A stretch of DNA of 64,000 bases from Obrimoposthia wandeli (Eukaryota): NCBI GenBank assembly GCA_977020255.1, contig CDROCS010005043.1:1-64000 (forward strand), read 5' to 3'. The position numbers and the translations under genes are program-made. The notes beneath the pieces were generated by a model, which worked only from the letters and a program-made list of their open reading frames with translations, searched no databases and was not told the DNA's origin. This document shows, in pieces, positions 26,187-49,973 of the stretch (position 1 is its first letter; each line of letters opens with the position of its first letter).

Positions 26187-26212
26187 GAAATAACCTTACA
26201 ACTATGAGAGAA

Positions 26213-26234
26213 GCTTATGGGCTAACCCATAAGC
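26213..26234. other. Intercistronic 9-bp hairpin between autotransporter and lyase genes
   Basis: gcttatggg-ctaa-cccataagc, with only a weak U tail on the minus strand. Confidence 0.7.
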
Positions 26235-26241
26235 AGCTAAT

Positions 26242-28341: not shown

Positions 28342-28389
28342 AATTATCACTCTCAGAAATAAATTCAGATCAACTCACACAACACTGAC

Positions 28390-29322: not shown

Positions 29323-29663
29323 AACTTTTTATGACTCCCTAACGTTAAACTCAATGTGATTGTATATATTTTATAAACGCAATTTTAACGATTTCTCACT
29401 AAAAGTTTGTGATCAACCACCAATTATCGAAAGCAAACAAAAGAAACAAAGTAAGTAAAAGAAAAAGTTCAAAAAATATTAACTAATATTTAAATAAGAT
29501 CTAAAACATCATAAACTACTGGTTAATAAAGAATAAGTCGATTTAAATCGCTAGATTAGTAAGCATTGTTAAATTTACTGATCAACACCATGTCACAAAA
29601 CAGTTAATAAAAAGTATAAATACATTGAAATACATTTCATTAAAGCTTTAAAATCTTCACATA

Positions 29664-29698
29664 GAAAGACAAAGAAAGAAAAGGAAAGCAAAGGAAAG
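29664..29698. promoter_or_regulatory. Four AgaR-type GAAAG boxes upstream of the Ig-like lipoprotein
   Basis: GAAAG at 29664, 29674, 29684 and 29694, an exact 10-bp period. Confidence 0.7.
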
Positions 29699-29772
29699 AT
29701 AGGTTTGATGTATTAGTTCTACTAACCGTCAAATATAATTCTCTTATAATGAAACTACCCTAGGCAGGAATC

Positions 29773-32265
29773 ATGAAAAAAAGCTTTAAGTATTGCGCCA
29801 TTGCAATCGCCATTAGCAGTGTTCTTACAGGCTGTAATGACGAAGACACCACGAATTCAAATAACAATAACGGAAATCCTTACGTTGTACCGATCGCTTC
29901 TGATATAAGTATCTCTGGTGATAGTTACGTGAATTCAACGCTAACAGGTGAATATAAATTTATTGATCCGAACTATTCACCACGTGCAGAAGGCGCAAGT
30001 GCTTATAGCTGGAAAGTAGATGATCTTGATGGCGATAGAACTAATGATGTTGCCATTACGGGTGCAAATGAGCGCACCTTATTACTAGCTGATAATCAAC
30101 TAGACCAGTCTGTATATTTGTGTGTCACACCTGAAGCAACAGGTAACACAAATACGACTGGTGAAACGAAATGTTCAACGGCGAAATTGGTTCAATCAGC
30201 AAACGGCTCTAAACCCTCAGCAACAAGTGCTGTTATCGATAACACAACTCCGACAGTTGGCGACACCTTGACGGGTAGTTATGACTATGCCGATGCTGAT
30301 AACGATCTAGAAAGCGGTTCAACTTTCCGCTGGAAAGCCAGCGCGAATGACATTACGGGTGCGACGAGCATTACTCACACACTGACTAATCAGCAAGAAG
30401 GGAAAGTCATTGAGTTTTGTGTCACACCAACGTCTGCCAACCCAGATAGCATTTCTAATTACCCAACAATTGGCGATGAAGTGTGCTCTGCTGTTGATAC
30501 AGATGCAGTACAGGAAAAAGTAGGTGATGCGCCGACAGCAAATAATATTGTGATCACTGGTGATCACACGGTAGGCTCAACACTGACTCCAACCTACGCT
30601 TTCAGTGATGCTGATAATGATGCACAAGGCAGCAGTACCTTTAGCTGGAAACGCGGTTCAATCGAAGTAGCAACAACATTAGCTTATGAATTAGTAAGCG
30701 CGGATGTTGGTGCGAATATTACCTTTACTGTGACGCCCGTTTCAGCGACAGGGCTACCAACAAATGGTACACCTGTAGAATCTGGCGCGATAACCGACGT
30801 CGCGCAACCTTCAGGTCCAACACCGACAATCTCTTTAAAGGCAGTAGATAAAGCCGGTAAAGCTTACCCTGAAATTAACGATACATTGACCGGTGGTTAC
30901 ACTTACACCCCGTCAATAACCAACTCAGCAGATGAATCTACCGCGGTATGGAAAGCAGCAGGTGTACCGATCACCGATGTCACTTGTACTACCGGTTCCG
31001 ATTGTTCTTTAACGCTCACTGACACTTATTACAATAAAGACTTAACGTATTGTGTGACGCCGAAAGCAGTTGATAGCTCTGCAGGTACTGAGAAATGTAG
31101 CGCCATCGAAAAAGTCTATGGTGTAAAACTCTCTGGCACACTCGAGTTTGGTAAAGAGTTAAAACTAGACATATCGGGTTATAACAATCCAAAGGTTGAA
31201 TGGAAAGTCGACGTTAGTGATATTGAAGGCCCAACCAGTGATGATAATCGCACGCCGCGTAATCCAGTAAAAACCGGTGAAGCAGCAAAAACGTTCTTAA
31301 TTGGCGCTGAAGTATTGAAACAAATCATCAATACAGATCAAGCTAGTCTACTTGACTTAGATGCTACTATTGGTAACAAAAACGGGATTGTTGATGATGC
31401 CGATTGGGCACAAGCCTCTCTTTTAGGTAATGTCACTATGGACAGTGGTTCTGTTGATGCCAACGCCATTAATGCCGCGAACTACGTAGGTAAAGAAGTC
31501 GAAGTTACTGTCACATTTACTGAATCAAACGTAGATCCAGTTACCTTGATCGCGTCAAAAACAACTGAAGTACTCGGTGGCGTTTATTACGATACCAGTG
31601 ATGCAACCAAGCGTGGTATTGAGCCTGTAAGAGAATTAGTTTTCGGTACTCTGGTTTATCACCGTCCATTGACTGTGGCTGAAGCAACTCATAAAGCGGC
31701 TGTTGGTTTTGGTGCTAACGTAGCTTATCCGCGTTATTCAAAACCATCAGCAGGAATCAACTGGGGACTATATCGCGCAATAAAAGATGCATCAGATACT
31801 GCTGATAAGTACAACTCAGACTTCCCTGCGGTTGAATCTTGCTTGAATCTATATGATGAAGCGGCTAAGGATGTTTGGCATTTACCTGCAAGCCGTTATG
31901 ATTCAGCTTACACAGCAAACGGTTTTGCAGCCCAAGGCAATAAGCCACCAATGGAAACTGCCGATGAAAAGTATTCATTAATCCAATTGGCAAGCGCGAT
32001 CAACAAAAGTGATAACACAGTCAGAAATGGCTTACTCGGCACTTATATCGACCGTACAACGCCGAACGAGAAACTTAATTATACCATTTCACCGACGACT
32101 GGGTGGCTATTAAATGGCAATACTGGACTAACTGCTTTTTGGAGCGCTACGAAACCAAATTCAAGTTCATCGACAGCGAACTCGGTATTATTCACAGAAT
32201 CAGGTGGTTCAGGTAACAACGGTTTGACCAATGGCCGCTTTGTTTCATGTGTTAGAGCAAAATAA
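29773..32265 (+). CDS. Lipoprotein with four tandem Ig-like repeats and a C-terminal invasin/DUF823-like (C-type-lectin-like) domain
   Basis: Lipobox LTGC. Four ~95-aa repeats (VG.TLTG.Y...D...S...W...V/CTP...G...CS). The tip has YHRPLTVAE...W...C...WHLP...TGW...FWS...FVSCVR. Confidence 0.75.
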   Translation: MKKSFKYCAIAIAISSVLTGCNDEDTTNSNNNNGNPYVVPIASDISISGDSYVNSTLTGEYKFIDPNYSPRAEGASAYSWKVDDLDGDRTNDVAITGANERTLLLADNQLDQSVYLCVTPEATGNTNTTGETKCSTAKLVQSANGSKPSATSAVIDNTTPTVGDTLTGSYDYADADNDLESGSTFRWKASANDITGATSITHTLTNQQEGKVIEFCVTPTSANPDSISNYPTIGDEVCSAVDTDAVQEKVGDAPTANNIVITGDHTVGSTLTPTYAFSDADNDAQGSSTFSWKRGSIEVATTLAYELVSADVGANITFTVTPVSATGLPTNGTPVESGAITDVAQPSGPTPTISLKAVDKAGKAYPEINDTLTGGYTYTPSITNSADESTAVWKAAGVPITDVTCTTGSDCSLTLTDTYYNKDLTYCVTPKAVDSSAGTEKCSAIEKVYGVKLSGTLEFGKELKLDISGYNNPKVEWKVDVSDIEGPTSDDNRTPRNPVKTGEAAKTFLIGAEVLKQIINTDQASLLDLDATIGNKNGIVDDADWAQASLLGNVTMDSGSVDANAINAANYVGKEVEVTVTFTESNVDPVTLIASKTTEVLGGVYYDTSDATKRGIEPVRELVFGTLVYHRPLTVAEATHKAAVGFGANVAYPRYSKPSAGINWGLYRAIKDASDTADKYNSDFPAVESCLNLYDEAAKDVWHLPASRYDSAYTANGFAAQGNKPPMETADEKYSLIQLASAINKSDNTVRNGLLGTYIDRTTPNEKLNYTISPTTGWLLNGNTGLTAFWSATKPNSSSSTANSVLFTESGGSGNNGLTNGRFVSCVRAK

Positions 32266-32301
32266 TACTCACTAACTAACTAACACATATGAAGTATAGT
32301 T

Positions 32302-32346
32302 AATCTCGTCATGACAAGTAACTCTTGTTAATGACGAGATTTTTTT
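32302..32346 (+). terminator. Terminator after the Ig-like lipoprotein
   Basis: aatctcgtcat...atgacgagatt stem plus T run. Confidence 0.8.
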
Positions 32347-32493
32347 AATCAAATATTCATAATTTATATCAAGATCTGATTAACAGACCTTGCACATGAG
32401 CCTGCTAACCAAATGAATATGCCTTGTAATTAGCGCTACCCCACGATTTCACTTAGTTACACCAAAGTATACTTCACGCCCCACCCCCTAAAA

Positions 32494-32548
32494 CAAAGCC
32501 AAACAAAGAAAAACAAAAGCGATCGAAACCACAAAATTAAAATCGAAG
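32494..32548. promoter_or_regulatory. Degenerate 10-bp-phased (C/G)AAAG boxes upstream of the beta-helix gene
   Basis: CAAAG 32494, CAAAG 32504, CAAAA 32514, CGAAA 32524, CGAAG 32544. Confidence 0.45.
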
Positions 32549-32700
32549 CCATTCACAACTAACAAAAAAAACATGTCGTCCTGATAAAATAAACCTAATT
32601 CTATATATTACTCATTGAGCTTAACTGTTGACTCAACACTCAAACTAGGACAACAGTTGCTCAACATAACTCTTAACAACTTATATATGGTAAGAACTTT

Positions 32701-33825
32701 ATGAAACACATGAAAAAAGTAAAATCAATATTAGGACTTTCTCTTCTATATTTACCGCTTAGTGTGAGCGCTTCAGTCTGTGGTGTAGTAGGTGGGGGTT
32801 CAGTCCCTCTCACTATAGATCATGACACCGCAAAAACAGTGTCAATTACCACTTACACTGAATTACAAAGTGCGCTGTTAGCAGGGGAAAAACATATCTA
32901 CATTCCCGGCAACATCACAATTACGATCCCCAATAGCAAGAATGCGTTAATCATCCCTGAAGGGACAACTTTATTCAGTGACCGTGGAACGAATAATAGT
33001 CCAGGAGCTTTATTGCAAACCAACTACCTCAATGAGGCAGACAATTATTATGCCGTGATATCCATCGCGAGTAATGTCGAATTAAGTGGCTTAAGGATCC
33101 AAGGCCCAAATAGTAATATTGATACAGACAATCTGACCATTGGCATGCAGTCTGTCGCTGGCAGTAAAAATATCGCTATTACTAATAGTGAACTCTATGC
33201 TTGGCCTGGCGCTGCGTTATCACTAAAAACATCGTTGAATGCAGAAATTAGCTACAGCTATATTCATCACAACAGAAAATCATCACGTGGTTATGGTGTT
33301 GTCGTACAAAACGGTAGTACATCAGCAGCAATATACTGCAATGTATTTGATGCCAACCGTCATAGTATTGCTGGTTCAGGGCAGTCTGGAGAATCTTATA
33401 CCGCGTCTTACAACCTGGTACTGCCAGAAGGTAAAGGCCATGCGTTTGATATGCATGAAAGCTCCGACCCAGCAAGTAAGATAGGTGGTAGTTATGTCAA
33501 TATAAGTAACAACTGGTTAGATTTTGGCGGTACAAAGTGGGGGCATTATCCGTCGATAAATGTGCGTGGAATACCAGAAGTTGGCGCGGCAACGATTCAG
33601 AAAAATCATTTCACATCAGCAATACAATATCTTGATGGCGGAGCCAGAACGAAACGCCCAATTGAAGGCGTATCTGGCGCGATAGCTGCAGATAATACAT
33701 TAAAAAGTAACAATGAATTTGATGTTAATTTTAACTATGCCAATGATGGTCAACAGTGTTCTTTCAGTTATGGTTCGATGACACAGCAAGTTAATTGTAC
33801 AGCTGTAAGTTCAGTATTACCTTAA
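32701..33825 (+). CDS. Secreted right-handed beta-helix (pectin-lyase-fold) protein, function unknown
   Basis: Signal peptide. Repeats with Asn/Ile ladders (VELSGLRIQG, IAITNSEL, ISYSYIHHN, IYCNVF..NRHSIAG, HAFDMH, VNISNNW). Confidence 0.7.
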   Translation: MKHMKKVKSILGLSLLYLPLSVSASVCGVVGGGSVPLTIDHDTAKTVSITTYTELQSALLAGEKHIYIPGNITITIPNSKNALIIPEGTTLFSDRGTNNSPGALLQTNYLNEADNYYAVISIASNVELSGLRIQGPNSNIDTDNLTIGMQSVAGSKNIAITNSELYAWPGAALSLKTSLNAEISYSYIHHNRKSSRGYGVVVQNGSTSAAIYCNVFDANRHSIAGSGQSGESYTASYNLVLPEGKGHAFDMHESSDPASKIGGSYVNISNNWLDFGGTKWGHYPSINVRGIPEVGAATIQKNHFTSAIQYLDGGARTKRPIEGVSGAIAADNTLKSNNEFDVNFNYANDGQQCSFSYGSMTQQVNCTAVSSVLP

Positions 33826-34107
33826 TTTCCTTATCTAATATTGATTGTGTTCACGGCCTTGTGTTACGTTTTCAGCAAGGCCGATACAAAACTCAGCAAC
33901 TGATTCAAGATACTCAGCCCAAAATAGCATCAAATAAACGTGGCTTTGCAAGTCATCAGATAAAATGACAAACGCGGTCAGATTACTATATTTACGACCT
34001 GAAAAGGATAAAGTACTTCTATATATTATCGTAAACTAACCCCGTCATCGGCAGATATTACGTGTAATAACGAGGTAGAGCATGCATTTTAAATATTGCC
34101 AAAAAAT

Positions 34108-34887
34108 TTAATAATCAGTCACTAATTTAAACGAATAAGACGGTGTCCTTAATCCTTTCATATCAACCGTCACCATCAGCCCTTCCCCTTGTTTTACAAG
34201 CGAAACTCGTGACTCTGGATCATCCACATGAATTGTGTCTGATAGCAATGTATCCACGCCTCGATGCATAAAACGATTCAGCTTTTCCGTATCCATAAAA
34301 TCAACATCAGATGCGTGTAGTTTAAACTGAGCTTGCGTTTGCGCTTTGTCTTTCACTGCCACATTAATAGCCATGTTTCCCAATTGATGCTGAGTACTCA
34401 CCAGCAAGGGGGTTTCAGCACTAATATAACCAGCATTACTTGGTGCAATAAAATCTGCCACTAAAAAGTATCGACGGTTCTCAGCCACAGCACGCACTTT
34501 GGTATTGTTGGCTAACACGCGAACATCTGGTTTCGCTAAATAATGAGTCTGTAACGTGTTTGGCATATTAGGCAATAATAACGTATGTTCACCATCACCG
34601 CGCATCACCACAATTTCATCATCCGACAGAAAATAACTGGTATTATCATCACTGACTAACACGGCATTTTGCAACGAACTGAATGCCATATCGCCAAAGT
34701 TCGCCAAACCAAATGTCAGGCCTGGTAAAGGTTGCATATCAGTCACTTTAATTTTATCGGCTTGCTTGTAAACAATAAAATCATCACCTTGATACTGCCA
34801 GTCACTTGCTTGTGCTGTTACTACTGTGGTTGCTAATAGTGATGCACATAAAAGCGATAACAGGGCTGGTTTCGATGTCATCATCAT
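34108..34887 (-). CDS. Exported hypothetical protein
   Basis: Signal peptide (..TAQA), no family recognised; ATGA overlap with the upstream phosphoesterase stop. Confidence 0.8.
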   Translation of the reverse strand: MMMTSKPALLSLLCASLLATTVVTAQASDWQYQGDDFIVYKQADKIKVTDMQPLPGLTFGLANFGDMAFSSLQNAVLVSDDNTSYFLSDDEIVVMRGDGEHTLLLPNMPNTLQTHYLAKPDVRVLANNTKVRAVAENRRYFLVADFIAPSNAGYISAETPLLVSTQHQLGNMAINVAVKDKAQTQAQFKLHASDVDFMDTEKLNRFMHRGVDTLLSDTIHVDDPESRVSLVKQGEGLMVTVDMKGLRTPSYSFKLVTDY

Positions 34888-36110
34888 GAGGCTACTCCAT
34901 AGGTTAATTCGTCCAACATCTCGCCTTGATCGTTACTGATCTGAACGTGGATGTTTTGACTATCCGCTTGCACATAAATGCGTGTTGCGGTGCCCGCTTT
35001 CGGACCACCACCCACAATCAACGGGAAACCGACATCTAGATTTTCATAAACATGGGTATGACCCGCTAACATCAAATCGACACCTGCCGCAGTTAGCACT
35101 TTCAACCAACGAGCCTGAAACGAACGACTAATTTCAGAAATCCATTGCGTTGGCACATGGTGCCAAATCGGGATGTGGCAACAAACAATACGAAACTGTG
35201 CATTTTTCCATTCAGGTGTTTGGATCACGGTTTTGATCCACTCTAACTGCTGCTCACGATAGGCTTCAAAATCCGCCAAACCTTGGTAATCTTCCCAAAA
35301 GTCAGGTTTATCTTCCCCTGTATCTAACATTAAAAACTGTACTGGCCCCTGTTTGAAAGTGTAATAATTAACACCTTCTGTCGGGGTACTTAAATAACGC
35401 TGCATACTGCGGGCATGTGTACCGCGACACTCATGGTTACCGCGTAAAAAATGCAAGATAGAGTTTGGCTCAATACCAACAAATTGCTGATAAATAATGT
35501 CTCTCAGCTGGTTTTCACTTTTTGCTTCGGTAATAAGATCGCCATTCAACAAGGTAAAATCAGCAGGCTGTTGCTTGGCTTGTGCCACCAAACGTTTTAT
35601 CACCGGATTATTTTGGTGCAGATCATTAAATACATTAAACCTAACTTGCTCTGTATTCTGAACTGGCATATAAACCGCAGGCTCAGAGACGACACGGTGG
35701 CCAAGCTTAAATGGCCATTCATCATTTAAACAAGGGCGTCCTAAAAAGCGGTAATTAATCTTGCTAACACCGCTACCAATTGCAAGTCGGAATGTATGAC
35801 AAGTATTTAATGTATTCATCAATCCCATGACCGCAGGTTTATGCGCAGTAAAAAAACCACCATCAACAGCATATTCAAGCTCAACAGCGGCATTTATATT
35901 GGTGAAAATAATGAGGTCAATGAAACCTGATTCGGCATAAGTGATCGCAGGGTGAGTAACGAAGGCAAATGCTTCGACAGGTTGCATCGTATGCTGTTCT
36001 TCCGGTTGAGATTGTGCAGTCACTGTCGGTGAAAACAACGATACCCCGGTACCGATAGCAACGGATGCAACAGACACCCCCTTCATAAACTGCCTTTTAC
36101 TTTTATCCAT
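34884..36110 (-). CDS. Tat-type calcineurin-like metallophosphoesterase (purple-acid-phosphatase-like, with N-terminal FN3-like part)
   Basis: NDLH, NGD, RGNHE, HIP and GHTH motifs; N-terminal SKRQFMK Tat-like motif. Confidence 0.85.
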   Translation of the reverse strand: MDKSKRQFMKGVSVASVAIGTGVSLFSPTVTAQSQPEEQHTMQPVEAFAFVTHPAITYAESGFIDLIIFTNINAAVELEYAVDGGFFTAHKPAVMGLMNTLNTCHTFRLAIGSGVSKINYRFLGRPCLNDEWPFKLGHRVVSEPAVYMPVQNTEQVRFNVFNDLHQNNPVIKRLVAQAKQQPADFTLLNGDLITEAKSENQLRDIIYQQFVGIEPNSILHFLRGNHECRGTHARSMQRYLSTPTEGVNYYTFKQGPVQFLMLDTGEDKPDFWEDYQGLADFEAYREQQLEWIKTVIQTPEWKNAQFRIVCCHIPIWHHVPTQWISEISRSFQARWLKVLTAAGVDLMLAGHTHVYENLDVGFPLIVGGGPKAGTATRIYVQADSQNIHVQISNDQGEMLDELTYGVAS

Positions 36111-36142
36111 AAATATACTCCTTCAAATAAATAAAATAATGT

Positions 36143-37897
36143 CTATTGCAACCACGTCGGCAAATACCCTAACCTGCGCTCGACTTGTGCTTGATATAAC
36201 GACTGCGGATACACAGATTTACCCAATGACTCAACATATGCCTGCGGTACGGTTAGCAACGGCTCTGGATACTTGGCATAACCGTTGTCATTCACGTATT
36301 GCACATAACCTTGGGTATCACTTACCGTGATTGGCGCACCGTGAAAGCCAATCAAATACGGCATAATGATCCGTCCATAAGCATTGTCCTTACGCATTAA
36401 CTCATAACCCTGTATTGGCTTATCAATATTGTTATAATTCCAATATATCAACCCTTTCAGATGGTTAGGTTGATTCATTATTGCCGCGCCCCAACGACCG
36501 TAGATCCAGCCCCCAGTGACATTATCAAACAAGTTCAAACGTGGTTGTGCACCATGTAAATCAGATGACGCATTGGCATTAAATTGGGTTTTAAAGTGCA
36601 CATTCGATGACGACATATGCGAGAAACCCGGTGCATGCCAAGCGTTAGAATTATCTGTAACATTCATCGACAAATTATTAAATGAGAACTGCATCTGTAA
36701 TGATAAATGCCCAGCATTACCATTGAGGTTCATATTTTTCACTGTCGAATTTGCCGTGATTGTGAGCGACATGCCGGCATTGAAATCGACTAATTCAAGA
36801 TCTTGCGCCCAGCTATTGGCAACACGTCGGAACTGGACAAGACTCCAAGCGCTGTCATGGATAAGGCCATCCGTCGTTAATTTATGATGTTTAAATGTAT
36901 CTTGCCAATTACCGCGAATGGTTAACTGTTCTAATCCCACGTTTTCCAGCATCGCGACTTTCGTTACCTGCCAATTATCTTCCGGGTCAATATCCACTTG
37001 GATTGGCGCATAAAACTTAATTTGATCACCATTAATGGCTTTGACCTGATGCAATTCTTGTAAGGCCAAACCTTGTCGCAATTTCGTCCAACGGCTTTCT
37101 AGCTTGTACGGTGAAATTTGCGCCTCAATATAATCGGGACGTTTAACTGATGCAGCTAATGCAACCCAATCACCAACTTTAAATTCCGCACCAATAATGC
37201 GCAGCTTATTCAGCTGGATAGTGTTACTGCTACCAGCAACATGGGTAGAACTGACCTTTGCAACAACGGCTTGTTCAGGTTGGCCTTTATTCGGTGAAGT
37301 GAAATTAATGATGCGTGGTGTTGACCACATTTTTTTCGGGTCTTTAGGCAATAACGGCATGCGCATAAACAGTTCAGTTTTACCCTGACCCGCGCCACGT
37401 AACACGATATTACTTTGCGTAATATTAATCAGTTTCTGCGCGGCAACATCGCTACTTTCATTAATCAATAATTGTCCTTCAGGGAAAGCTACGATAGCCG
37501 CACGTTTCTCCGCATCGTTGCCTTTTCGCCCATCTTCGACGTAACCTTCAGCTTGTTTGATTGCCTCGATAATTGCGCTTTTATCACTGTGTTCATCGTT
37601 AGCAATAGCGCCATAATCGGTGACGTTAAACACTTTATAAGTGGCACCATTCGGGGCGATATCACCACTCGGTAACGGCTGTTCGCCTCGTTGATAACCG
37701 ACGTAAGCAAAATTATTAAGTACCTCATCACCAGTAAACTTGCTTGCTGGGTCATACAGATCATTGCCCGCACTGCGTGAGGCTTCAAATTGTTGCCAAT
37801 AACGCGAAGTATTGACTTGCTCTGCAGCAAGTTCTCCACTCATCACCATCACCAGCGGCGCTAAACCCAGCAACAAGTTAATATATTTATATCTCAT
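36143..37897 (-). CDS. Secreted beta-helix protein, DUF4955-like, putative polysaccharide-active enzyme
   Basis: Signal peptide; FAYVGY..GE..LP, VFNVTDYGAIAND..SD..AI (pectate_lyase_3-type start), LRGAG, and C-terminal H..QPR.NLFD..GG...PNH...L.YWN. Confidence 0.7.
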   Translation of the reverse strand: MRYKYINLLLGLAPLVMVMSGELAAEQVNTSRYWQQFEASRSAGNDLYDPASKFTGDEVLNNFAYVGYQRGEQPLPSGDIAPNGATYKVFNVTDYGAIANDEHSDKSAIIEAIKQAEGYVEDGRKGNDAEKRAAIVAFPEGQLLINESSDVAAQKLINITQSNIVLRGAGQGKTELFMRMPLLPKDPKKMWSTPRIINFTSPNKGQPEQAVVAKVSSTHVAGSSNTIQLNKLRIIGAEFKVGDWVALAASVKRPDYIEAQISPYKLESRWTKLRQGLALQELHQVKAINGDQIKFYAPIQVDIDPEDNWQVTKVAMLENVGLEQLTIRGNWQDTFKHHKLTTDGLIHDSAWSLVQFRRVANSWAQDLELVDFNAGMSLTITANSTVKNMNLNGNAGHLSLQMQFSFNNLSMNVTDNSNAWHAPGFSHMSSSNVHFKTQFNANASSDLHGAQPRLNLFDNVTGGWIYGRWGAAIMNQPNHLKGLIYWNYNNIDKPIQGYELMRKDNAYGRIIMPYLIGFHGAPITVSDTQGYVQYVNDNGYAKYPEPLLTVPQAYVESLGKSVYPQSLYQAQVERRLGYLPTWLQ

Positions 37898-37932
37898 CCA
37901 CTTTCTCCAGATAACACATCAAAATAAAATAT

Positions 37933-37969
37933 AAAAAAAGCCGACCAAACAAAATGTTTAATCAGCTTT
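37933..37969 (-). terminator. Terminator after GH105
   Basis: Minus strand aaagctgattaaac-atttt-gtttggtcggcttt (G-U pairs) plus U run. Confidence 0.7.
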
Positions 37970-38003
37970 ATTAGTGCTACTCAATAATTGTATTTAACTA
38001 TTG

Positions 38004-39053
38004 TTATTTAGCTAAATGGGCAACTTCAGTTGCCGCAAGTAAGAAAGCACCCGCACCATAATCGATGTTGTGTTCGAACTTCACGTCACGTGGGTTAAAC
38101 GCCGGTAATTGTACCCACCCCATCATGCCATTATCGTGGATAGCTGTTTGCAGCGCTGTCCAGGCTTTTTCTAATACTGGTAAATAAGTCTCACGATCTA
38201 ATTCACCGTTATTAATCCCCCAAGCAAGGCCGTAGCAAAACAATGATGTAGCGCTACTTTCTGGTGCAGGGAAGTTTTCTGGATCCAGTAAACTGGTACG
38301 CCAGAAACCGTCTGCTTGCTGATATTTAATCACTTCAGCAGCCAGGTTTTTAAACAATGCTAAATAACGCGCTTTATCAGCAAAATCGTCCGGTAAACGC
38401 GCCATCAAACGTGGTACAGACGCAAGAACCCAGCCGATGCCACGGCTCCAGAATACTTTTTCACCATTGGCTTCACGTAATTCACCGCCTTTTCCATCTG
38501 GAATATAACGGTGATCACGATAAAAAAGACCGGTTTCTGGATCAAACAAATGCTCTACTGAATCCCAATAAGCGATATTCATGTAGTCTAAATATTTGTT
38601 ATCACCCGTTTGCTTAGTTAATGCTGCAAACGACGGCGGAGCCATAAATAATGAATCACACCACCACCAGTCTTTACGACCAGGTTCTGGGTTATCAACC
38701 ATCAGATCTAACGCTTTAACGGTAGAGTCTAATGCTTCAACTTGATCGACCACAGGGTAAACATCTAAGTACGCCTGACAACAGATATGGTCATCAGCAA
38801 AACGGGCATTAGGCCCGGTTCTGAATCCAGTATGTAGTGCATAGTTCATCACTCCGTCTAGGTACTCTGCATCATCACTTGCTTTCCAAGCTGCTGACGC
38901 ACAAGACCAAAACACACCACGTTCCCAATCAGTATCTTTAATGAAGCGTGTTTTACCACTGCGACGTACCACACTACGAGTTTGGTTTGCCGCTTGATAA
39001 CGATAGACACGTTTCATCGTATCTAAAACTTGCTGTTTCGTTCCAAAAGCCAT
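38004..39053 (-). CDS. GH105/GH88-type unsaturated glycuronyl hydrolase, cytoplasmic
   Basis: W.RGVFW, ADD..C.Q.Y, WWWCDSLFMAPP, GLFYRD, FWSRG.GW, ESSATSLF.Y, YG.GAFLLA; no signal peptide. Confidence 0.88.
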   Translation of the reverse strand: MAFGTKQQVLDTMKRVYRYQAANQTRSVVRRSGKTRFIKDTDWERGVFWSCASAAWKASDDAEYLDGVMNYALHTGFRTGPNARFADDHICCQAYLDVYPVVDQVEALDSTVKALDLMVDNPEPGRKDWWWCDSLFMAPPSFAALTKQTGDNKYLDYMNIAYWDSVEHLFDPETGLFYRDHRYIPDGKGGELREANGEKVFWSRGIGWVLASVPRLMARLPDDFADKARYLALFKNLAAEVIKYQQADGFWRTSLLDPENFPAPESSATSLFCYGLAWGINNGELDRETYLPVLEKAWTALQTAIHDNGMMGWVQLPAFNPRDVKFEHNIDYGAGAFLLAATEVAHLAK

Positions 39054-39063
39054 AACGGACTCC

Positions 39064-39819
39064 TTAGCGTGCTAACCAACCACCGTCAACAGCGATAGTG
39101 TAACCATTAACATAATCACTTGCGCTTGATGCAAGGAATACCGCAGGACCCGCTATATCTTCAGGTGTACCCCAACGGTCAGCAGGAATACGTTCTAAGA
39201 TTGCCGCGTTACGCTCTGGATCAGCACGTAATGCTTCAGTATTATCTGTTGCCATGTAACCCGGTGCGATTGCATTCACGTTGATATTATATTTAGCTAA
39301 TTCATTCGCCATTGCACGTGTTAGACCCATAACCGCAGATTTACTTGCAGTGTAAGACGGCACTCGGATACCACCTTGGAAAGATAACATCGACGCGATG
39401 TTGATGATCTTGCCGCCTTCACCTTGTTTTACACATTGTTTTGCAACAGCTTGTGATAGGAAAAATACTGTTTTTTGGTTAATGTTGATCACATCATCCC
39501 AATTCTTTTCAGAAAACTCTAAAAAATCTTCACGGCGGATGATACCCGCATTGTTTACCAAAATATCAACACGACCCATTACTTCAACAGCTTCACTTAC
39601 AATGTTAGACACTTGGTCTTGTTCCATTAAGTTAGCTGTAATGTAATGAAACTTACACCCTAACGCTTCAATCTTAGCTTGTGTTTCTGGAGCAGGCTGA
39701 TGACCAACACCAACAATATCAGCACCAGCTTGGGCTAGACCAATCGCACTGCCTTGACCTAAACCTGTATTACAACCCGTTACAATGGCAACCTTGCCTG
39801 ACAAATCAAAAGAGTTCAT
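39064..39819 (-). CDS. kduD: 2-dehydro-3-deoxy-D-gluconate 5-dehydrogenase
   Basis: VTGCNTGLGQG, NNAGIIRRED, GKIINIASMLSFQGGIRVPSYTASKS. Confidence 0.97.
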   Translation of the reverse strand: MNSFDLSGKVAIVTGCNTGLGQGSAIGLAQAGADIVGVGHQPAPETQAKIEALGCKFHYITANLMEQDQVSNIVSEAVEVMGRVDILVNNAGIIRREDFLEFSEKNWDDVININQKTVFFLSQAVAKQCVKQGEGGKIINIASMLSFQGGIRVPSYTASKSAVMGLTRAMANELAKYNINVNAIAPGYMATDNTEALRADPERNAAILERIPADRWGTPEDIAGPAVFLASSASDYVNGYTIAVDGGWLAR

Positions 39820-39907
39820 ATCAACTTCCTAACTATAGAATAACAGCACTCTGGTGAATCCTTTTAAAATCACCAGATTACCGTGAAAGAGGAATAACGA
39901 TTATTCG

Positions 39908-40738
39908 TTATTTCAGGTCGCTCATTGCGATGTGATCCATATCGTGGAACGTTTGGTTTTCACCCACCATACCCCAGATAAAAGTATAAGATGCAGTACC
40001 TACACCAGAGTGAATTGACCAACTTGGGCTAATTACCGCTTGCTCATTACGCACTACGATGTGACGAGTTTCTTGCGGCTGTCCCATGTAATGGAAAGCA
40101 ATGTTGTCATCTTTCATATCAAAATACAGGTAAACTTCCATACGTCTTTCATGGGTATGACAAGGCATCGTATTCCATAGACTACCAGGGGCTAGCTCTG
40201 TCATGCCCATTAATAACTGGCAAGTTGGTAGCACCGCTGGATGCAGATATTTGTAAATAGTACGAACATTACAGTTTTCTTGATTACCTAATGTTTCAGG
40301 TGATGCTTCATCACGGGTAATTTTACGTGTTGGGTAAGTCATATGTGCAGGTGCACAGTTTAGATAAAAACGCGCAGGTTGCTCAGCGTTGTCACTCAAG
40401 AACTGAATCTCTTGTGCGCCTTTACCTACGTAAAGTGCTTCACGTGCGCCGATTTCATAAGTCACACCATCAACGATCACAGAACCCGCTTCACCGATGT
40501 TAATGACACCTAGCTCACGACGTTGTAAGAAAAAATCAACACCAATCTCTTTACCACCTTCAAATACCACAGGTACTGTTGTTGGCACTACACCACCAAC
40601 AATAATGCGATCGATATGACTATATGTAAGGTTGATTTGACCTTCCTGGAACATATCTTCAATTAAAAACTGTTCTCTTAGACCCGCGGTGTCTAGCTGC
40701 TTTGCATGCTCACTGTGTATTGGCTGACGAATTTCCAT
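39908..40738 (-). CDS. kduI: 4-deoxy-L-threo-5-hexosulose-uronate ketol-isomerase
   Basis: [47 protein letters not shown]. Confidence 0.97.
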
Positions 40739-40843
40739 TAAATAAACCTCTTAACTATTAACTATTAACTACCAGTTACACAAATTATGCATAACTACTA
40801 AAGATTAACTCTTCACATCGACAACAAGGTATGATCGCTTAGA

Positions 40844-41992
40844 CTAGGCTTGAAAAGCCCACTTCCCCTTGACCAAGGTACCCCGTACTTGTAATTCTTT
40901 ATTCATAACGGTCAGGCTAGCATCCATACCGACGGCGATAGAACCAAGGCGGTTAGCTAAACCTAAATACAGTGCAGGTACTGAAGTCGCCATTTGCACG
41001 GCTTCCCAGGCTGGGACACCAGAAGCGAACACCATATTGCGCACTGCTTGATCTAAACTGCAGGTACTGCCTGCTAATGAACCATCATCAGTGCGGGCTT
41101 CACCATTTTTAACATTAACGATCTGCGCCCCTAATTGATAAGGACCATCTGCCAGTCCACCAGCGCGCATACAATCAGTGATAAGTGCAATCTTTTCATA
41201 ACCTTTCATACGATAGGCAAGTTGCATCATCACTGGATTAACATGGATACCGTCAGCAATCAGTTCGGCTAGCATGTCGTGATAAAGCACTGCGCCACAG
41301 CAACCCGGTTCACGGTGATGTAAACCACTCATGCCATTAAACAAATGCACACCACAGTCGGCACCAAGTTCAAACGCTTCGGTAACTTGGGCAAAATTGG
41401 CATTGGTATGAGCTACAGACGTTTTAATATTATTTGCCGTTAACCACTTAATCGACGCCATCGCATTATCGGCTTCTGGCGCAATGGCCACCCGTAATAA
41501 TGACTCACCAGCAACGATTTTTAATTCTTCCAGTTCATGATGTTCCGGTGATTTTAACAATCGACTTGGGTGCGAACCGCGGTGACGTTCTGTAAAGTAA
41601 GGTCCCTCTAAGAAGCTACCTAACAATTCTGCGCCCTCTGCTTGTCCGTCTGCGATATAACTACGCACCTTAGTTAACGCGGTAATAATATCTTGCCAAG
41701 GTGCAGTTACCGTTGTGCCTACCCATGCAGTAACACCAGTAGAAGGTAAGGCTTGAGCAATACCGTCTAACGCCGCATCTGTCGCATCCATCACATCATG
41801 GCCATGACGACCATGAATATGGATATCAACGAAACCTGGCATCAAGGATTGTCCTGTTAGGTGTATAACCTCACAGTCCGTTGGCACTGTTGTTGAGACC
41901 TCGGCAATTTTGCCATCTTCAACCACGACAACCTGATTTAACTCAATCCCATTTGGGGTATAAACTTCATCTGCTACCAACGCAAAACGCAT
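40844..41992 (-). CDS. agaA: N-acetylgalactosamine-6-phosphate deacetylase (NagA family)
   Basis: PGFVDIHIHG, LEGPY, SVAHT, HLFNGM, IADGIHV, ITDCM, LAGS. Real start is ATG 41992. Confidence 0.92.
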   Translation of the reverse strand: MRFALVADEVYTPNGIELNQVVVVEDGKIAEVSTTVPTDCEVIHLTGQSLMPGFVDIHIHGRHGHDVMDATDAALDGIAQALPSTGVTAWVGTTVTAPWQDIITALTKVRSYIADGQAEGAELLGSFLEGPYFTERHRGSHPSRLLKSPEHHELEELKIVAGESLLRVAIAPEADNAMASIKWLTANNIKTSVAHTNANFAQVTEAFELGADCGVHLFNGMSGLHHREPGCCGAVLYHDMLAELIADGIHVNPVMMQLAYRMKGYEKIALITDCMRAGGLADGPYQLGAQIVNVKNGEARTDDGSLAGSTCSLDQAVRNMVFASGVPAWEAVQMATSVPALYLGLANRLGSIAVGMDASLTVMNKELQVRGTLVKGKWAFQA

Positions 41993-41993
41993 G

Positions 41994-42437
41994 CTATAAA
42001 CCCTCGTCGTCAAATTCGTCTGTTGTTGGCGCCATCGCCGCTTCAAACTCTTTACGCATGTCTTTAATACAAGCATGACCAATTTCTAATACGATCTCAA
42101 CTAACTCATGTAAATCAACATCATCACGTTCAAATGCTGCATTGGCAATCATGGGTAAATTAGCACCACCTATCACTTCAACTAACGGTGTATCCATCAT
42201 GATAGCCGTGGCACGATTCGACGGTGAACCACCTGGAATATCAGTCAAAAATAGCACTCCATCACCGGTATTAACCTCGGCAGCGGCAGCACGTAATTCA
42301 CCTTCCAAGTCATCTGTTGACATGGTTTCAACAAAATCAACAAAGCGCATTTGCGCTTGTTCGCCGGCAATTGCGCCGACTGCAGATTGAACACCGGATG
42401 CAAAGTTAATATGTCCTGAAACTACAATTCCAATCAT
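41994..42437 (-). CDS. agaF: Mannose-family PTS EIIA (AgaF-like)
   Basis: MIGIVVSGHINFASG (phospho-His), TDIPGGSP, GANLPM. Start ATG 42437 with AAGGA SD. Confidence 0.85.
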   Translation of the reverse strand: MIGIVVSGHINFASGVQSAVGAIAGEQAQMRFVDFVETMSTDDLEGELRAAAAEVNTGDGVLFLTDIPGGSPSNRATAIMMDTPLVEVIGGANLPMIANAAFERDDVDLHELVEIVLEIGHACIKDMRKEFEAAMAPTTDEFDDEGL

Positions 42438-42482
42438 AATAAAGTCCTTAAAATTGGGAGAAACATGTTCTCCCAAAACATA

Positions 42483-43376
42483 TTACATAATGCCGATAGC
42501 GTGGCCGATAACACCCGCCGCTAAGGTTGCAAAAATAAGTACCGGTGGTTTAGCCCAGAAGCCAGTGCCTTTTACCATTTTCAGCATAAAGAATACTAAT
42601 GCCAGCGGTAGAATGTTGGGCATGATCTTATCGAATAGCGCCGTTTGTAACTCGACGCTTGCACCACCAAGCTCTGCAGTCAAGGTTGTTTCTACTTTAA
42701 TGAATGTCGCCGATAGCGCACCAATCACAAAGATACCCATGATATTCGCTGCTTTTGCTAACTTCTCTGTGGTATCACTCATGTTCACCATGGCAGCGGT
42801 ACCCGCTTTATAACCCATGAACATTAAACCAAAGTACGCAAAGAAGTGCGCCGTTTGGTATAAGAAGAAGAATACAAAAGGACCAGCAATCGAGCCCTCC
42901 AGTGCGATAGACGCACCTAAGGCCAGTGTTAATGGCATGATTGTCATGTGATCAAGCGCATCACCAATACCACCTGTAGGCCCCATACCTGCCACTTTCA
43001 TGACGTTAATCGTTGACGGTTTCTCTTTACTTTCTTCCATCGCTATCGCGGTACCGAGTAAGAAAGTAAATAGTTTTGGGCTGGCATTAAAAAACTGTAA
43101 ATGATTCTTTAGCGCTTTAGCAAAATCACGTTCATTACCGTGAATTTTCTTTAATGCTGGGATGATAGAATAAGCAAAACCACCCGCTTGCATACGTTCA
43201 AAGTTGAAGTTACCTTCCATTAACAAACCACGTAACGCACATACCCAAAGATCTTTCTTGGTGATCACACCTTTCTTTGTGGTATCTTCGTAAGCATCAA
43301 TGCCATCAATTAAATTAATATGATTCTGTGATTTTTTCTCAACAAAGTTGCTGCTAGCTGTGATATCAGATGCCAT
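42483..43376 (-). CDS. agaE: Mannose-family PTS EIID (AgaE-like)
   Basis: FNFERMQAGGFAYS..P.L.KI, HLQFFN, MGPTGGIGD, LDKIMP-type motif. Confidence 0.85.
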   Translation of the reverse strand: MASDITASSNFVEKKSQNHINLIDGIDAYEDTTKKGVITKKDLWVCALRGLLMEGNFNFERMQAGGFAYSIIPALKKIHGNERDFAKALKNHLQFFNASPKLFTFLLGTAIAMEESKEKPSTINVMKVAGMGPTGGIGDALDHMTIMPLTLALGASIALEGSIAGPFVFFFLYQTAHFFAYFGLMFMGYKAGTAAMVNMSDTTEKLAKAANIMGIFVIGALSATFIKVETTLTAELGGASVELQTALFDKIMPNILPLALVFFMLKMVKGTGFWAKPPVLIFATLAAGVIGHAIGIM

Positions 43377-44139
43377 CTTCAAAGTCCTCTTCAGAATTAT
43401 CTACATTATTTTCTGTACCATTACTGCTATAGAAGAAATACAGTGCTGCAATCGATGCACCGATAATAGCTACAGCCATAATTGGTAAATGTAGGTATGT
43501 CGTCATCACGAAACCGATGAAGAATACCCCTGCTACTTCTTTAGACCACATGATTTTAAGTAACATCGCGAAACCAATCGCTGGCACCATTTTTGCGCCA
43601 ATACCAAGACCTTCAAGTACGACTGTCGGTGCATTTTCATCGATCCATTTTGCGCCATGCTCACCAAAGTAAACGGTAGCAAATGCAATAACAGCATATA
43701 ACATTGCCCGGGCAAATAAGGTGCCCAGTAACAAACGGTCAATACCGCCTGAATCACCACTTTCTGCATAACGGTCAGCTTTGCCCATCGTAAATGATGT
43801 CATAGCAAAGAAACCGATCACCAACATTTGCATTAATACAGCAATCGGCATACCTACACCCATTGCCACTGCCGCAGACTGATTGGTCATCACTGCAAAT
43901 GCTACCGCTGCGATTGTACCCATGGTTACATCTGGCGGCTGAGCACCGGCGTTAGGCACAAGACCTAACCAAGCAAGTTCCAGTGTCGCACCGGCGATTA
44001 GACCGGTTTGCATGTCACCCATGATAAAACCGACAACAGGACCGGTAATAAGTGGTCGGTGAATATTTAGTGCAATATCGTATTTATCGATACCACATAA
44101 AAATGCCCACGCGGCAACTAATAACGCTTCATAAATCAT
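43366..44139 (-). CDS. agaW: Mannose-family PTS EIIC (AgaW-like)
   Basis: HRPLITGPVVG, GATLEL, AGAQPPD, PAIGFAMLL, C-terminal FEDGI. Confidence 0.85.
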   Translation of the reverse strand: MIYEALLVAAWAFLCGIDKYDIALNIHRPLITGPVVGFIMGDMQTGLIAGATLELAWLGLVPNAGAQPPDVTMGTIAAVAFAVMTNQSAAVAMGVGMPIAVLMQMLVIGFFAMTSFTMGKADRYAESGDSGGIDRLLLGTLFARAMLYAVIAFATVYFGEHGAKWIDENAPTVVLEGLGIGAKMVPAIGFAMLLKIMWSKEVAGVFFIGFVMTTYLHLPIMAVAIIGASIAALYFFYSSNGTENNVDNSEEDFEDGI

Positions 44140-44182
44140 AATAATTCCCCTTTATAATCATAATATTACATACAAAATCTAT

Positions 44183-44683
44183 TTATGCTTTTTCAGCAAT
44201 CGCAGCTAAGATATCAATAGGACTTTGATCTGGTGTATTTTGGATGGTACAAGTCACATTACATTGAACAATGCGTTCAAATGCTTCAATATCGTTGTCA
44301 TCCACAGATACTGTTTTAGTCAACTTGCGCTTACCTTCATGGAAGTGCATGTTGCCCACATTGCAATGTGGAATTGGCACGCCACCTTCAACCAAACGAG
44401 CAACATCAGTTGGGTTGTTACATAAGATAAAGATCTTTTGTTTTGCTGACGCTTTGGCAATTACATCAATCGTTTTCTGGATTGAGAAAAAACGTACCGC
44501 ATATTCACCACCCGCAGAGGCTTTCATACCCGCTTGCATAAATGCGGCGTTTGGGCCATCTGCAGCGTCATCATTCGCGACTAAGATTAGATTCGCTTCA
44601 CTGTGTTTACCCCAAGTAATGCGGATTTGTCCATGTAGTAGGCGTTCGTCAATACGAGTCCAAACGATATTAGGAGATGTCAT
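44183..44683 (-). CDS. agaV: Mannose-family PTS EIIB (AgaV-like)
   Basis: RIDERLLHGQ (phospho-His), NVGNMH, KTVSVD. Confidence 0.87.
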   Translation of the reverse strand: MTSPNIVWTRIDERLLHGQIRITWGKHSEANLILVANDDAADGPNAAFMQAGMKASAGGEYAVRFFSIQKTIDVIAKASAKQKIFILCNNPTDVARLVEGGVPIPHCNVGNMHFHEGKRKLTKTVSVDDNDIEAFERIVQCNVTCTIQNTPDQSPIDILAAIAEKA

Positions 44684-44698
44684 AATCAATTCCTGTAC

Positions 44699-45862: not shown

Positions 45863-45885
45863 ATCTCTAATCCTTTAATTCAAAT

Positions 45886-47160: not shown

Positions 47161-47209
47161 TAAATAACTCCACAGTTAACATCTGGAATGCAACTATGGA
47201 GTTAGTGGA

Positions 47210-47986: not shown

Positions 47987-48089
47987 AAAACTTGTCTCCC
48001 AACAAAACTAAAAATTAATAAAACCTTTCGCTTTGCTTCGAGTGAAGAATACACCCTAAAACGAAAGGAACAATATAAAAAACAAAAAC

Positions 48090-49933: not shown

Positions 49934-49973
49934 GGTTATACACCTATTAATAATGAATGGATAACATGCATAT

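What the first reader, a model, noticed from the sequence alone, without database searches (positions are those of the whole stretch)
36143..37897. Secreted DUF4955-like beta-helix protein: candidate new GAG lyase/hydrolase family
Seen: Sec signal, pectate-lyase-3-type N-terminus, and His/Arg/Lys-rich C-terminal rungs (HKL..HDSAW, GH.S, HAPG, DLHGAQPR, PNH). It heads the three-gene unit immediately after GH105. Established: chondroitinase B (PL6) is a beta-helix enzyme and DUF4955 has no function known to me. Inference: it may act on dermatan or unusually substituted (for example fucosylated or over-sulfated marine) CS that PL8 handles poorly.
Basis: inference. Interest (0 to 1): 0.7.

Follow-up and report, generated by a model that had tools for sequence, protein, structure and literature searches.

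The report
Known-family (PL29) secreted chondroitin/hyaluronan lyase
This gene encodes a secreted beta-helix enzyme from the already described PL29 family of glycosaminoglycan lyases (founder: Bacteroides BT3328); it sits in a marine bacterium's chondroitin-sulfate utilisation locus, so it is an uncharacterised member of a known family, not a new family.

Summary
Window 36143-37897 (minus strand) is an intact 584-aa ORF with a Sec-type signal peptide, a pectate-lyase-3-type N-terminal cap (PF12708) and a DUF4955 domain (PF16315).

The claim of a candidate new family does not hold. The protein matches NCBIfam NF058554, 'BT3328 family hyaluronic acid endo-lyase', at E 1.3e-93 over the whole catalytic part. 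BT3328 (BtCDH) founded CAZy family PL29 in 2018 and cleaves CS, HA and, weakly, DS endolytically. The protein here is a short form: it lacks the ~300-aa Bacteroides spacer and the lipid anchor, and it scores far below the equivalog cut-off.

The AlphaFold model (pLDDT 90.5) is a right-handed beta-helix with only generic structural neighbours. Chondroitinase B (PL6) is not among the top 50.

Six His, one Asp, one Trp and one Asn are invariant across 29 diverse homologues. No Lys, and no Arg within the beta-helix, is invariant.

Fourteen of 17 homologue loci carry PL8, sulfatase, GH88/GH105 or KduI/KduD genes within 10 kb.

The contig is bacterial and Moritella-like, inside a 1.35-Gb assembly.

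Verdict: a new member of a known kind, of low to moderate interest.

The parts
36143..37897 (-). PL29-family (BT3328/BtCDH-like, DUF4955) glycosaminoglycan lyase gene, 584 aa, short secreted form
   Evidence: ORF. NCBIfam NF058554 at E 1.3e-93, aa 55-583 against profile positions 318-836 of 840. Pfam DUF4955 and PF12708. 30% identity, E 1e-75, to BT3328-family protein P0054. AF2 beta-helix model, pLDDT 90.5.
37823..37897 (-). Sec-type signal peptide (about aa 1-25); no lipobox cysteine
   Evidence: Read from the translation. pLDDT is below 50 for residues 1-25. Family conservation starts at W34.
37373..37630 (-). N-terminal cap of the beta-helix (pectate-lyase-3 / RHGA-epimerase type, aa 90-175)
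   Evidence: PF12708, 28.9 bits. A profile of the family matches the same cap in AlgE epimerases, PfbA, GH55 and GH110 structures.
36437..36889 (-). Block of family-invariant polar residues on successive beta-helix coils (H337, H338, D348, H397, H421, H448, H479, W486, N487; nearly invariant D415, Q451, D458, N478). This is the candidate active-site groove.
   Evidence: Invariant in 29 sequences that span the gammaproteobacterial, Kiritimatiellota and Bacteroidota BT3328-type clades. The spacing 397-421-448-479 (24-31 residues) equals one coil of the predicted helix. A catalytic role is inferred, not shown.
36257..36640 (-). DUF4955 Pfam domain (aa 420-547)
   Evidence: In the control genomes the same Pfam model hits only Bacteroides thetaiotaomicron.
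37905..37908 (-). GGAG ribosome-binding site, 8 nt upstream of the ATG
   Evidence: Sequence read.
37937..37969 (-). Terminator-like AT-rich hairpin followed by a T-run, between the GH105 gene and the lyase gene. It could be a partial terminator or an mRNA-processing site.
   Evidence: Consensus scan and sequence. No convincing sigma-70 promoter lies between it and the ATG, so read-through from the upstream operon is likely. This is inference.
38004..39053 (-). GH105-like unsaturated uronyl hydrolase. It is the upstream neighbour, and this adjacency is conserved in the Moritella relative.
   Evidence: PF07470 at E 1e-71. Best PDB hit 4CE7 (GH105) at E 3.7e-61. 95% identical gene directly upstream of the 80%-identical lyase in L010/L012.
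34108..36110 (-). Two downstream genes: a Tat-signal metallophosphoesterase (34884-36110) and a 259-aa ORF with no family match (34108-34887). They are not conserved partners of the lyase.
   Evidence: Pfam Metallophos. N-terminus SKRQFMKG...TAQS. No tblastn match in any of 20 homologue loci, including the syntenic Moritella MAG. No defence-system match.
20569..63996 (.). Surrounding chondroitin/dermatan sulfate utilisation island. It contains Eda, KdgK, PL8 ChABC-type lyase (23085-26186), autotransporter, OMP, Ig-lipoprotein, the lyase gene, GH105, KduD, KduI, NagA-like, mannose-type PTS IIA/D/C/B, AgaS, KbaZ, DeoR regulator, DUF2264, sulfatase, anSME, MCP, a second PL8 (55304-58426), a second sulfatase and a broken third PL8.
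   Evidence: Pfam scans.

Best explanation
The gene encodes a Sec-exported, single-module right-handed beta-helix polysaccharide lyase of CAZy family PL29, the BT3328/BtCDH family that Pfam still labels DUF4955.

By homology it should cleave the beta-1,4 hexosaminidic bonds of chondroitin sulfate and hyaluronan (possibly dermatan sulfate) endolytically by beta-elimination. That releases Delta-4,5-unsaturated oligosaccharides.

The two ChABC-type PL8 lyases and the sulfatases of the same island would then trim these to disaccharides. The GH105-like hydrolase would remove the unsaturated uronate, and KduI/KduD/KdgK/Eda and the GalNAc PTS/AgaS/KbaZ pathway would consume the products.

The active site is probably the groove lined by the invariant residues H337, H338, D348, H397, H421, H448, H479, W486 and N487. 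Because no Lys, and no Arg within the beta-helix, is invariant, a His-based (metal-independent or His-ligated-metal) mechanism is more likely than the Ca2+/Lys/Arg mechanism of PL1/PL6/PL9.

Shown here: homology, fold, residue conservation and genomic context. Inferred: activity, substrate range, endo mode, catalytic residues and final location (periplasm or secreted).
For: Homology:
- NCBIfam BT3328_fam at E 1.3e-93 covers aa 55-583, equal to profile positions 318-836 of 840.
- BLASTP gives 30% identity and E 1e-75 to P0054, which itself scores 968 bits on that model.
- DUF4955 at E 1.2e-34. The DUF4955 model hits B. thetaiotaomicron alone among 14 control genomes.

Literature:
- BT3328 is the PL29 founder, an endo-acting beta-eliminase on CS/DS/HA.
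- Its preference is CS-A > CS-C > HA with little DS, it needs DP >= 8, and its N-terminal ~300 aa are a separable spacer.
- SoPL29 is likewise endo-acting on HA and CS.

Structure and conservation:
- AF2 model with pLDDT 90.5 and pTM 0.91. It is a beta-helix with Z 20-24 to beta-helix lyases, epimerases and hydrolases.
- Invariant polar residues are shared with the BT3328-type sequences.

Context:
- The window's island is described.
- 14 of 17 distinct homologue loci have PL8, sulfatase, GH88/GH105 or KduI/D within 10 kb, and 10 of the 17 have a PL8.
Against: - No enzyme of this gammaproteobacterial short-form clade has been assayed, as far as the searched literature shows.
- Identity to the characterised Bacteroidota clade is only ~30%. 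The score (315 bits) is far below the NCBIfam equivalog cut-off of 1100, so the same substrate specificity cannot be assumed.
- No PL29 structure is in the PDB copy searched, and I found no report of mutagenesis. The catalytic assignment therefore rests on conservation only.
- Three homologue loci (Pseudoalteromonas luteoviolacea and two Photobacterium) show no GAG genes within 10 kb.
Confidence: 0.85

Rival explanations
1. It is a PL29-fold lyase, but the marine gammaproteobacterial clade has shifted specificity. It would attack a substrate the PL8 enzymes handle poorly, such as dermatan sulfate, highly sulfated CS-D/E, fucosylated chondroitin sulfate of echinoderms, or another sulfated uronic-acid polysaccharide.
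For: - The clade is well separated from the BT3328 clade (100/100 support), with ~30% identity.
- Its hosts are largely animal-associated marine bacteria: Endozoicomonas, Vibrio, Photobacterium, Psychromonas.
- The neighbouring uronyl hydrolase is GH105-like, with its best match the ulvan-type 4CE7, not the GH88 usual in CS loci.
- Sulfatases flank many homologues.
Against: - All family-invariant polar residues are kept.
- The island's sugar catabolism is GalNAc plus unsaturated uronate, which fits ordinary CS/DS.
- The two ChABC-type PL8 enzymes already cover DS in characterised systems (general knowledge of chondroitinase ABC).
- BT3328 has little DS activity.
- No fucosidase or fucose pathway turned up in the Pfam scans of the window's larger ORFs.
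Confidence: 0.1
2. It is not a lyase. It would be either a beta-helix glycoside hydrolase or a non-catalytic glycan-binding or adhesin protein that merely shares the fold.
For: - Structural neighbours include many hydrolases (GH28, GH110, GH82) and an adhesin (PfbA), at Z values similar to those of the lyases.
- The PF12708 cap is shared with GH28, GH55 and GH110.
Against: - Sequence homology is to a family whose two assayed members are beta-eliminases.
- The invariant polar cluster is fully retained, which argues against a degenerate binding protein.
- A downstream unsaturated-uronate pathway (GH105, KduI, KduD) is adjacent.
Confidence: 0.04

Closest known systems
BT3328 / BtCDH of Bacteroides thetaiotaomicron, founder of CAZy PL29 (Ndeh et al. 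2018, J Biol Chem 293:17906; Ndeh et al. 2020, PMC6994673)
   Same: - Homologous over the entire catalytic module (NF058554 at E 1.3e-93; ~30% identity to a BT3328-family protein).
- It has the DUF4955 domain and the same invariant His/Asp/Trp/Asn residues.
- It lies in a CS/DS/HA utilisation locus with PL8 lyases, sulfatases and an unsaturated uronyl hydrolase.
   Different: - It lacks the ~300-aa N-terminal spacer (DUF4988 region) and the lipoprotein anchor, and has a plain Sec signal instead.
- It is 584 aa rather than ~840 aa.
- It scores 315 bits against the equivalog cut-off of 1100.
- It belongs to a separate gammaproteobacterial clade.
- The host uses a PTS and an autotransporter/Ig-lipoprotein module rather than SusC/D.
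SoPL29 of Segatella oris (CBM105-PL29; Liu et al. 2024, Int J Biol Macromol 271:132518, as cited in bioRxiv 10.64898/2026.10.07.757250)
   Same: Same family. It is an endo-acting lyase on HA and CS that works with an exo-acting PL8 and an unsaturated uronyl hydrolase.
   Different: SoPL29 carries an appended carbohydrate-binding module, whereas the protein here is a bare catalytic module.
   Same: A right-handed parallel beta-helix GAG lyase.
   Different: - No sequence similarity was detected.
- It is not among the 50 best structural matches in either VIA search.
- PL6 uses Ca2+ with Lys/Arg catalysis, whereas this family has no invariant Lys or Arg in the helix.
Klebsiella K1 capsule lyase (7W1C), AlgE-type mannuronan epimerase/lyases (8JA4, 2PYG) and Geobacillus virus E2 ORF18 (7CHU)
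   Same: These are the best structural matches. 7CHU: Z 23.7, rmsd 2.7 A over 276 aligned residues. 7W1C: Z 23.1-23.5, rmsd 3.1-3.2 A over 302-338. 8JA4: Z 22.8, rmsd 3.5 A over 291. They share the N-terminal cap motif. They are beta-helix enzymes that abstract the C5 proton of uronates.
   Different: Sequence identity is only 14-17%. They do not stand clearly above GH28 hydrolases (Z ~20), so this is fold-level resemblance only.

Membership tests
CAZy PL29 (BT3328/BtCDH family) | Significant sequence similarity to the catalytic module of the founding member | tested here: met
   NF058554 at E 1.3e-93, 314.7 bits, aa 55-583 against profile positions 318-836 of 840. BLASTP E 1e-75 and 30% identity to P0054, a 968-bit member of that model. 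The dbCAN PL29 HMM itself was not available.
CAZy PL29 (BT3328/BtCDH family) | DUF4955 (PF16315) C-terminal region | tested here: met
   E 1.2e-34, 120 bits against a cut-off of 25. The same model hits B. thetaiotaomicron among the control genomes.
CAZy PL29 (BT3328/BtCDH family) | Retention of the polar residues invariant across the family (candidate catalytic set) | tested here: met
   H337, H338, D348, H397, H421, H448, H479, W486 and N487 are invariant in 29 sequences, including three BT3328-type proteins. Their catalytic role has not been established experimentally in any source I could read.
CAZy PL29 (BT3328/BtCDH family) | Beta-eliminative endo-cleavage of CS/HA (unsaturated products, A232) | not testable with these tools
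   This needs a recombinant enzyme assay.
CAZy PL29 (BT3328/BtCDH family) | Genomic association with GAG catabolic genes | tested here: met
   Window island. 14 of 17 distinct homologue loci carry PL8, sulfatase, GH88/GH105 or KduI/D within 10 kb.
NCBIfam NF058554 equivalog (true BT3328 orthologue: surface lipoprotein with N-terminal spacer) | Full-length match above the 1100-bit cut-off, with the spacer domain and lipid anchor | tested here: not met
   314.7 bits. Profile positions 1-317 are unmatched. The signal peptide has no Cys. The protein is therefore a family homologue, not a BT3328 equivalog.
PL6 (chondroitinase B / alginate lyase beta-helix) | Sequence similarity to PL6, and a Ca2+ site with Lys/Arg catalytic pair | tested here: not met
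   No Pfam or PDB sequence hit. Not in the top 50 structural matches. No invariant Lys or Arg in the helix.
Right-handed parallel beta-helix fold (pectate-lyase-like superfamily) | Predicted three-dimensional fold | tested here: met
   AF2 model with pLDDT 90.5. Z 15-24 to more than 50 beta-helix entries over model residues ~85-561.

The most novel reading that the evidence does not exclude
The short, anchor-less gammaproteobacterial PL29 clade (Moritella, Vibrio, Photobacterium, Psychromonas, Endozoicomonas) may be a functionally distinct subfamily. It would be a freely secreted endo-lyase tuned to marine-animal GAGs such as highly sulfated or fucosylated chondroitin or dermatan. It would use a His-based mechanism not yet described for beta-helix GAG lyases, and it would pair with a GH105-type rather than a GH88 uronyl hydrolase.
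Probability: 0.15. Interest if true: 0.5.

Novelty: new member of a known kind. Interest (0 to 1): 0.25.

Why it matters
The main result is corrective. Pfam's 'DUF4955' label hides a family that has been enzymatically characterised since 2018 (PL29). This gene should therefore be annotated as a PL29-family chondroitin/hyaluronan lyase, not flagged as a new family.

Some value remains:
- No solved PL29 structure and no defined catalytic residues turned up in the PDB copy and the literature searched here.
- All the assayed members found in that literature are Bacteroidota.
- A compact 560-aa single-module enzyme from a psychrophilic marine bacterium would be a convenient target for the first structure and mechanism.
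- It might also be a cold-active tool for making GAG oligosaccharides.
- The invariant His/Asp set listed here gives a direct mutagenesis plan.

Tried and rejected
- A full-text search for 'DUF4955' found no paper. The link to PL29 came from NCBIfam instead.
- The founding paper, PMC6240882, is not held. Its content is cited second-hand from reviews and from Ndeh 2020.
- Searching the PDB by sequence with the single protein found nothing. A 29-sequence profile found only the generic N-terminal cap in other beta-helix proteins. No solved PL29 structure could therefore be used to map catalytic residues.
- The search for related loci with the 29-sequence alignment failed because no stretch was conserved enough. 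It worked with an 11-sequence alignment.
- Defence-system (PADLOC) scans of the two downstream genes and the second beta-helix gene were empty.
- I looked for a sigma-70 promoter between the hairpin and the ATG. The only match overlaps the start codon, so I did not accept it.
- I considered horizontal transfer into the eukaryotic host genome and rejected it. The contig is 66.6 kb of dense bacterial genes, including miaB, phoH, lnt and ychF, and near-identical DNA occurs in marine sediment and ice metagenomes.
- The large representative protein search and read laying were not used, because the family scans had already settled the identity.
Full report
**Observation**

The stretch 36143-37897 is a single intact ORF on the minus strand: 584 aa, ATG start, GGAG 8 nt upstream. 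The N-terminus, MRYKYINLLLGLAPLVMVMSGELAAEQ, reads as a Sec/SPase-I signal with no lipobox cysteine. The AlphaFold model is disordered over residues 1-25.

Pfam gives DUF4955 (PF16315, E 1.2e-34, aa 420-547). It also gives a marginal but above-threshold pectate-lyase-3-type cap (PF12708, 28.9 bits, aa 90-175).

**Identity**

NCBIfam model NF058554, 'BT3328 family hyaluronic acid endo-lyase', matches at E 1.3e-93 (314.7 bits). The match covers residues 55-583 of the protein and positions 318-836 of the 840-position profile.

The word-based homology search returned 59 relatives, 58 of them carrying DUF4955. The longer Bacteroidota-type ones (P0050 and P0054) score 897-968 bits on the BT3328 model. 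The window protein aligns to P0054 with 30% identity and E 1e-75, residues 55-583 against 307-833. The Pfam DUF4955 model hits B. thetaiotaomicron alone among 14 control genomes.

BT3328 (BtCDH) is the founding member of CAZy family PL29:
- It is a surface-located, endo-acting beta-eliminase on CS, DS and HA (Ndeh et al. 2018, as summarised in PMC9067506, and PMC7793863).
- A later study found CS-A > CS-C > HA with little DS activity, and a requirement for DP >= 8.
- The same study identified the N-terminal ~300 residues as a spacer shared with surface glycan-binding proteins (PMC6994673).

That spacer corresponds exactly to the part of the profile our protein lacks. A second member, SoPL29 from Segatella oris, is also an endo-lyase on HA and CS. 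So the protein belongs to a known, characterised lyase family.

The score is far below the equivalog cut-off of 1100 bits. I therefore file it as a PL29-family homologue, not as a BT3328 orthologue.

**Fold**

A 29-sequence alignment (A1) gave an AlphaFold2 model with mean pLDDT 90.5 and pTM 0.91. Foldseek and two VIA-align searches, one of them exhaustive over 48,161 representative chains, show a right-handed parallel beta-helix. The best matches are:

| Entry | Protein | Z | rmsd (A) | Aligned residues |
|---|---|---|---|---|
| 7CHU | Geobacillus virus E2 ORF18 | 23.7 | 2.7 | 276 |
| 7W1C | Klebsiella K1 capsule lyase | 23.1-23.5 | 3.1-3.2 | 302-338 |
| 8JA4 | AlgE-type epimerase/lyase | 22.8 | 3.5 | 291 |
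| 1BHE | GH28 polygalacturonase | 20.4 | 3.5 | 313 |

Nothing stands out from the general beta-helix background. No PL29 structure was found in the PDB copy by sequence or by profile.

**Conserved residues and likely mechanism**

Across 29 sequences spanning the gammaproteobacterial, Kiritimatiellota and BT3328-type Bacteroidota clades, the invariant polar residues are H337, H338, D348, H397, H421, H448, H479, W486 and N487. D415, Q451, D458 and N478 are nearly invariant.

The spacing 397-421-448-479 (24, 27 and 31 residues) equals one coil of the predicted helix. These His residues should therefore stack along one face. I infer that this face is the substrate groove, but I could not check it because model coordinates are not exposed.

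The only invariant Arg (R575) lies in the C-terminal helix.

I therefore favour a His-centred beta-elimination. His would act as base or acid, or as a ligand of a metal that neutralises the carboxylate. This differs from the Ca2+/Lys/Arg chemistry of PL1, PL6 and PL9. It is inference.

**Context in the window**

From about 20.5 kb to the end of the window lies a chondroitin/dermatan utilisation island. In order it contains:
- Eda and KdgK;
- a ChABC-architecture PL8 (23085-26186);
- an autotransporter, an OMP barrel and an Ig-repeat lipoprotein;
- a small beta-helix protein;
- a 259-aa ORF with no family match, a metallophosphoesterase, then the PL29 gene;
- a GH105-like hydrolase, KduD, KduI and a NagA-like amidohydrolase;
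- a mannose-type PTS (IIA, IID, IIC, IIB), AgaS, KbaZ and a DeoR regulator;
- DUF2264, a sulfatase, anSME and an MCP;
- a second PL8 (55304-58426), a second sulfatase, and a third PL8 split by stops.

The first 19 kb carry housekeeping genes (miaB, phoH, corC, lnt, ychF).

A 15-pair AT-rich hairpin with a T-run (37969-37937) lies between the GH105 gene and the lyase gene. No credible promoter follows it. The lyase is probably transcribed by read-through; this is inference.

**Context of homologues**

I examined 17 distinct loci with up to 10 kb of flank on each side. They came from the look-up of encoding contigs and from the search for related loci in GTDB species genomes. I scored them with the tools' Pfam tables and by tblastn with the window's proteins.

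Fourteen of the 17 carry at least one of PL8, S1 sulfatase, GH88/GH105, KduI/KduD or anSME. Ten of the 17 carry a PL8. The exceptions are Pseudoalteromonas luteoviolacea and two Photobacterium loci.

The hosts are mostly animal-associated or cold marine bacteria: Endozoicomonas (six species), Vibrio, Photobacterium, Psychromonas and Moritella. Niabella hirudinis, Pontiella and Labilibacter also appear.

The closest relative (80% identity, a Moritella sp. MAG) has the order PTS-NagA-KduI-KduD-GH105-PL29. This is followed directly by the Ig-lipoprotein, OMP, autotransporter and PL8. The metallophosphoesterase, the 259-aa ORF and the 374-aa beta-helix gene have no counterpart in any of the 20 loci. 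The 'three-gene unit' is thus a local insertion next to the lyase, not a conserved functional unit.

Within the family of that Moritella MAG, only 1 of 13 species genomes carries DUF4955. The gene, and probably the island, is accessory.

**Phylogeny**

A maximum-likelihood tree of 30 sequences places the window protein with the Moritella sequence (100/100). Both fall inside a gammaproteobacterial clade of 16 rows (100/100) that is separate from the BT3328-type clade. No row was left out.

**Origin of the contig**

The genome search shows that the window belongs to contig C5043 (66,567 bp) of an assembly of 1.35 Gb in 6,912 contigs. That is a eukaryote-sized assembly. The contig is entirely bacterial in content.

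The lyase gene's DNA is found in the source sample (96% of sampled words). It is found partially in marine sediment (45%) and ice (29%) metagenomes. I read it as a Moritella-like associate or contaminant, not host DNA.

A paralogue (39% identity, 609-aa ORF) lies on another bacterial contig, C4085 (550 kb). It sits next to a sulfatase, an AraC regulator, a PfkB kinase and an SSF transporter. In the tree it falls in a different, Vibrio/Photobacterium-type sub-clade.

**Verdict**

It is a new, biochemically untested member of PL29, in a short secreted form typical of marine Gammaproteobacteria. Interest is low to moderate. The useful points are the annotation correction, the absence of any solved PL29 structure in the PDB copy searched, and a concrete list of candidate catalytic residues.

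Noticed in passing
whole window (G000:C5043, 66,567 bp): The window is a wholly bacterial, Moritella-like contig inside an assembly of 1.35 Gb and 6,912 contigs. It is probably an associated or contaminating marine psychrophile. Near-identical DNA also occurs in marine sediment and ice metagenomes.
   Followed up: partly
G000:C4085:528832-530661 (L002:187-2016): A second DUF4955/PL29 paralogue (609-aa ORF, 39% identical) lies on a 550-kb bacterial contig. It sits beside a sulfatase, an AraC regulator, a PfkB kinase and an SSF transporter, and is followed by DUF294/RNase T genes as in Vibrio alfacsensis. It may come from a second bacterium in the assembly.
   Followed up: partly
window 32701-36110: A Tat-signal metallophosphoesterase, a translationally coupled 259-aa ORF with no family match, and a 374-aa beta-helix protein on the opposite strand form a block. 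The block is absent from the syntenic Moritella locus and from all 20 homologue loci, so it is an insertion of unknown function between the lyase and the Ig-lipoprotein.
   Followed up: partly
window 38004-39053 (-): The unsaturated uronyl hydrolase of this chondroitin island is GH105-like. Its best solved relative is the ulvan-type 4CE7 at E 3.7e-61. It is not the GH88 found in Bacteroides and several Endozoicomonas loci. A 60%-identical copy accompanies the lyase in one Endozoicomonas MAG.
   Followed up: partly
window 61283-63996 (-): A third ChABC-type PL8 gene is split into two ORFs (Lyase_N/Lyase_catalyt in 62866-63996, Lyase_8 in 61283-62428). About 440 bp with several stops in frame lies between them. 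It is probably a pseudogene.
   Followed up: partly
window 26242-32265; L004, L006, L010, L022: The autotransporter, OMP barrel and Ig-repeat lipoprotein travel, in whole or in part, with PL8 and PL29 genes in Moritella, Vibrio and Psychromonas.
   Followed up: partly
L007:12984-13715, L008:13692-14486, L011:7217-7810; protein P0011: DUF1961 (PF09224) proteins recur within a few kb of DUF4955 lyase genes in Pontiella, Labilibacter and a metagenomic contig. In P0011 (824 aa) the DUF1961 domain is fused N-terminally to the lyase. It may be an accessory binding or catalytic module of PL29 systems.
   Followed up: no
window 48458-49933 (-): A DUF2264 protein (E 2e-76) sits between the DeoR regulator and the sulfatase/anSME pair of the island. 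Its role in GAG breakdown is not known to me.
   Followed up: no
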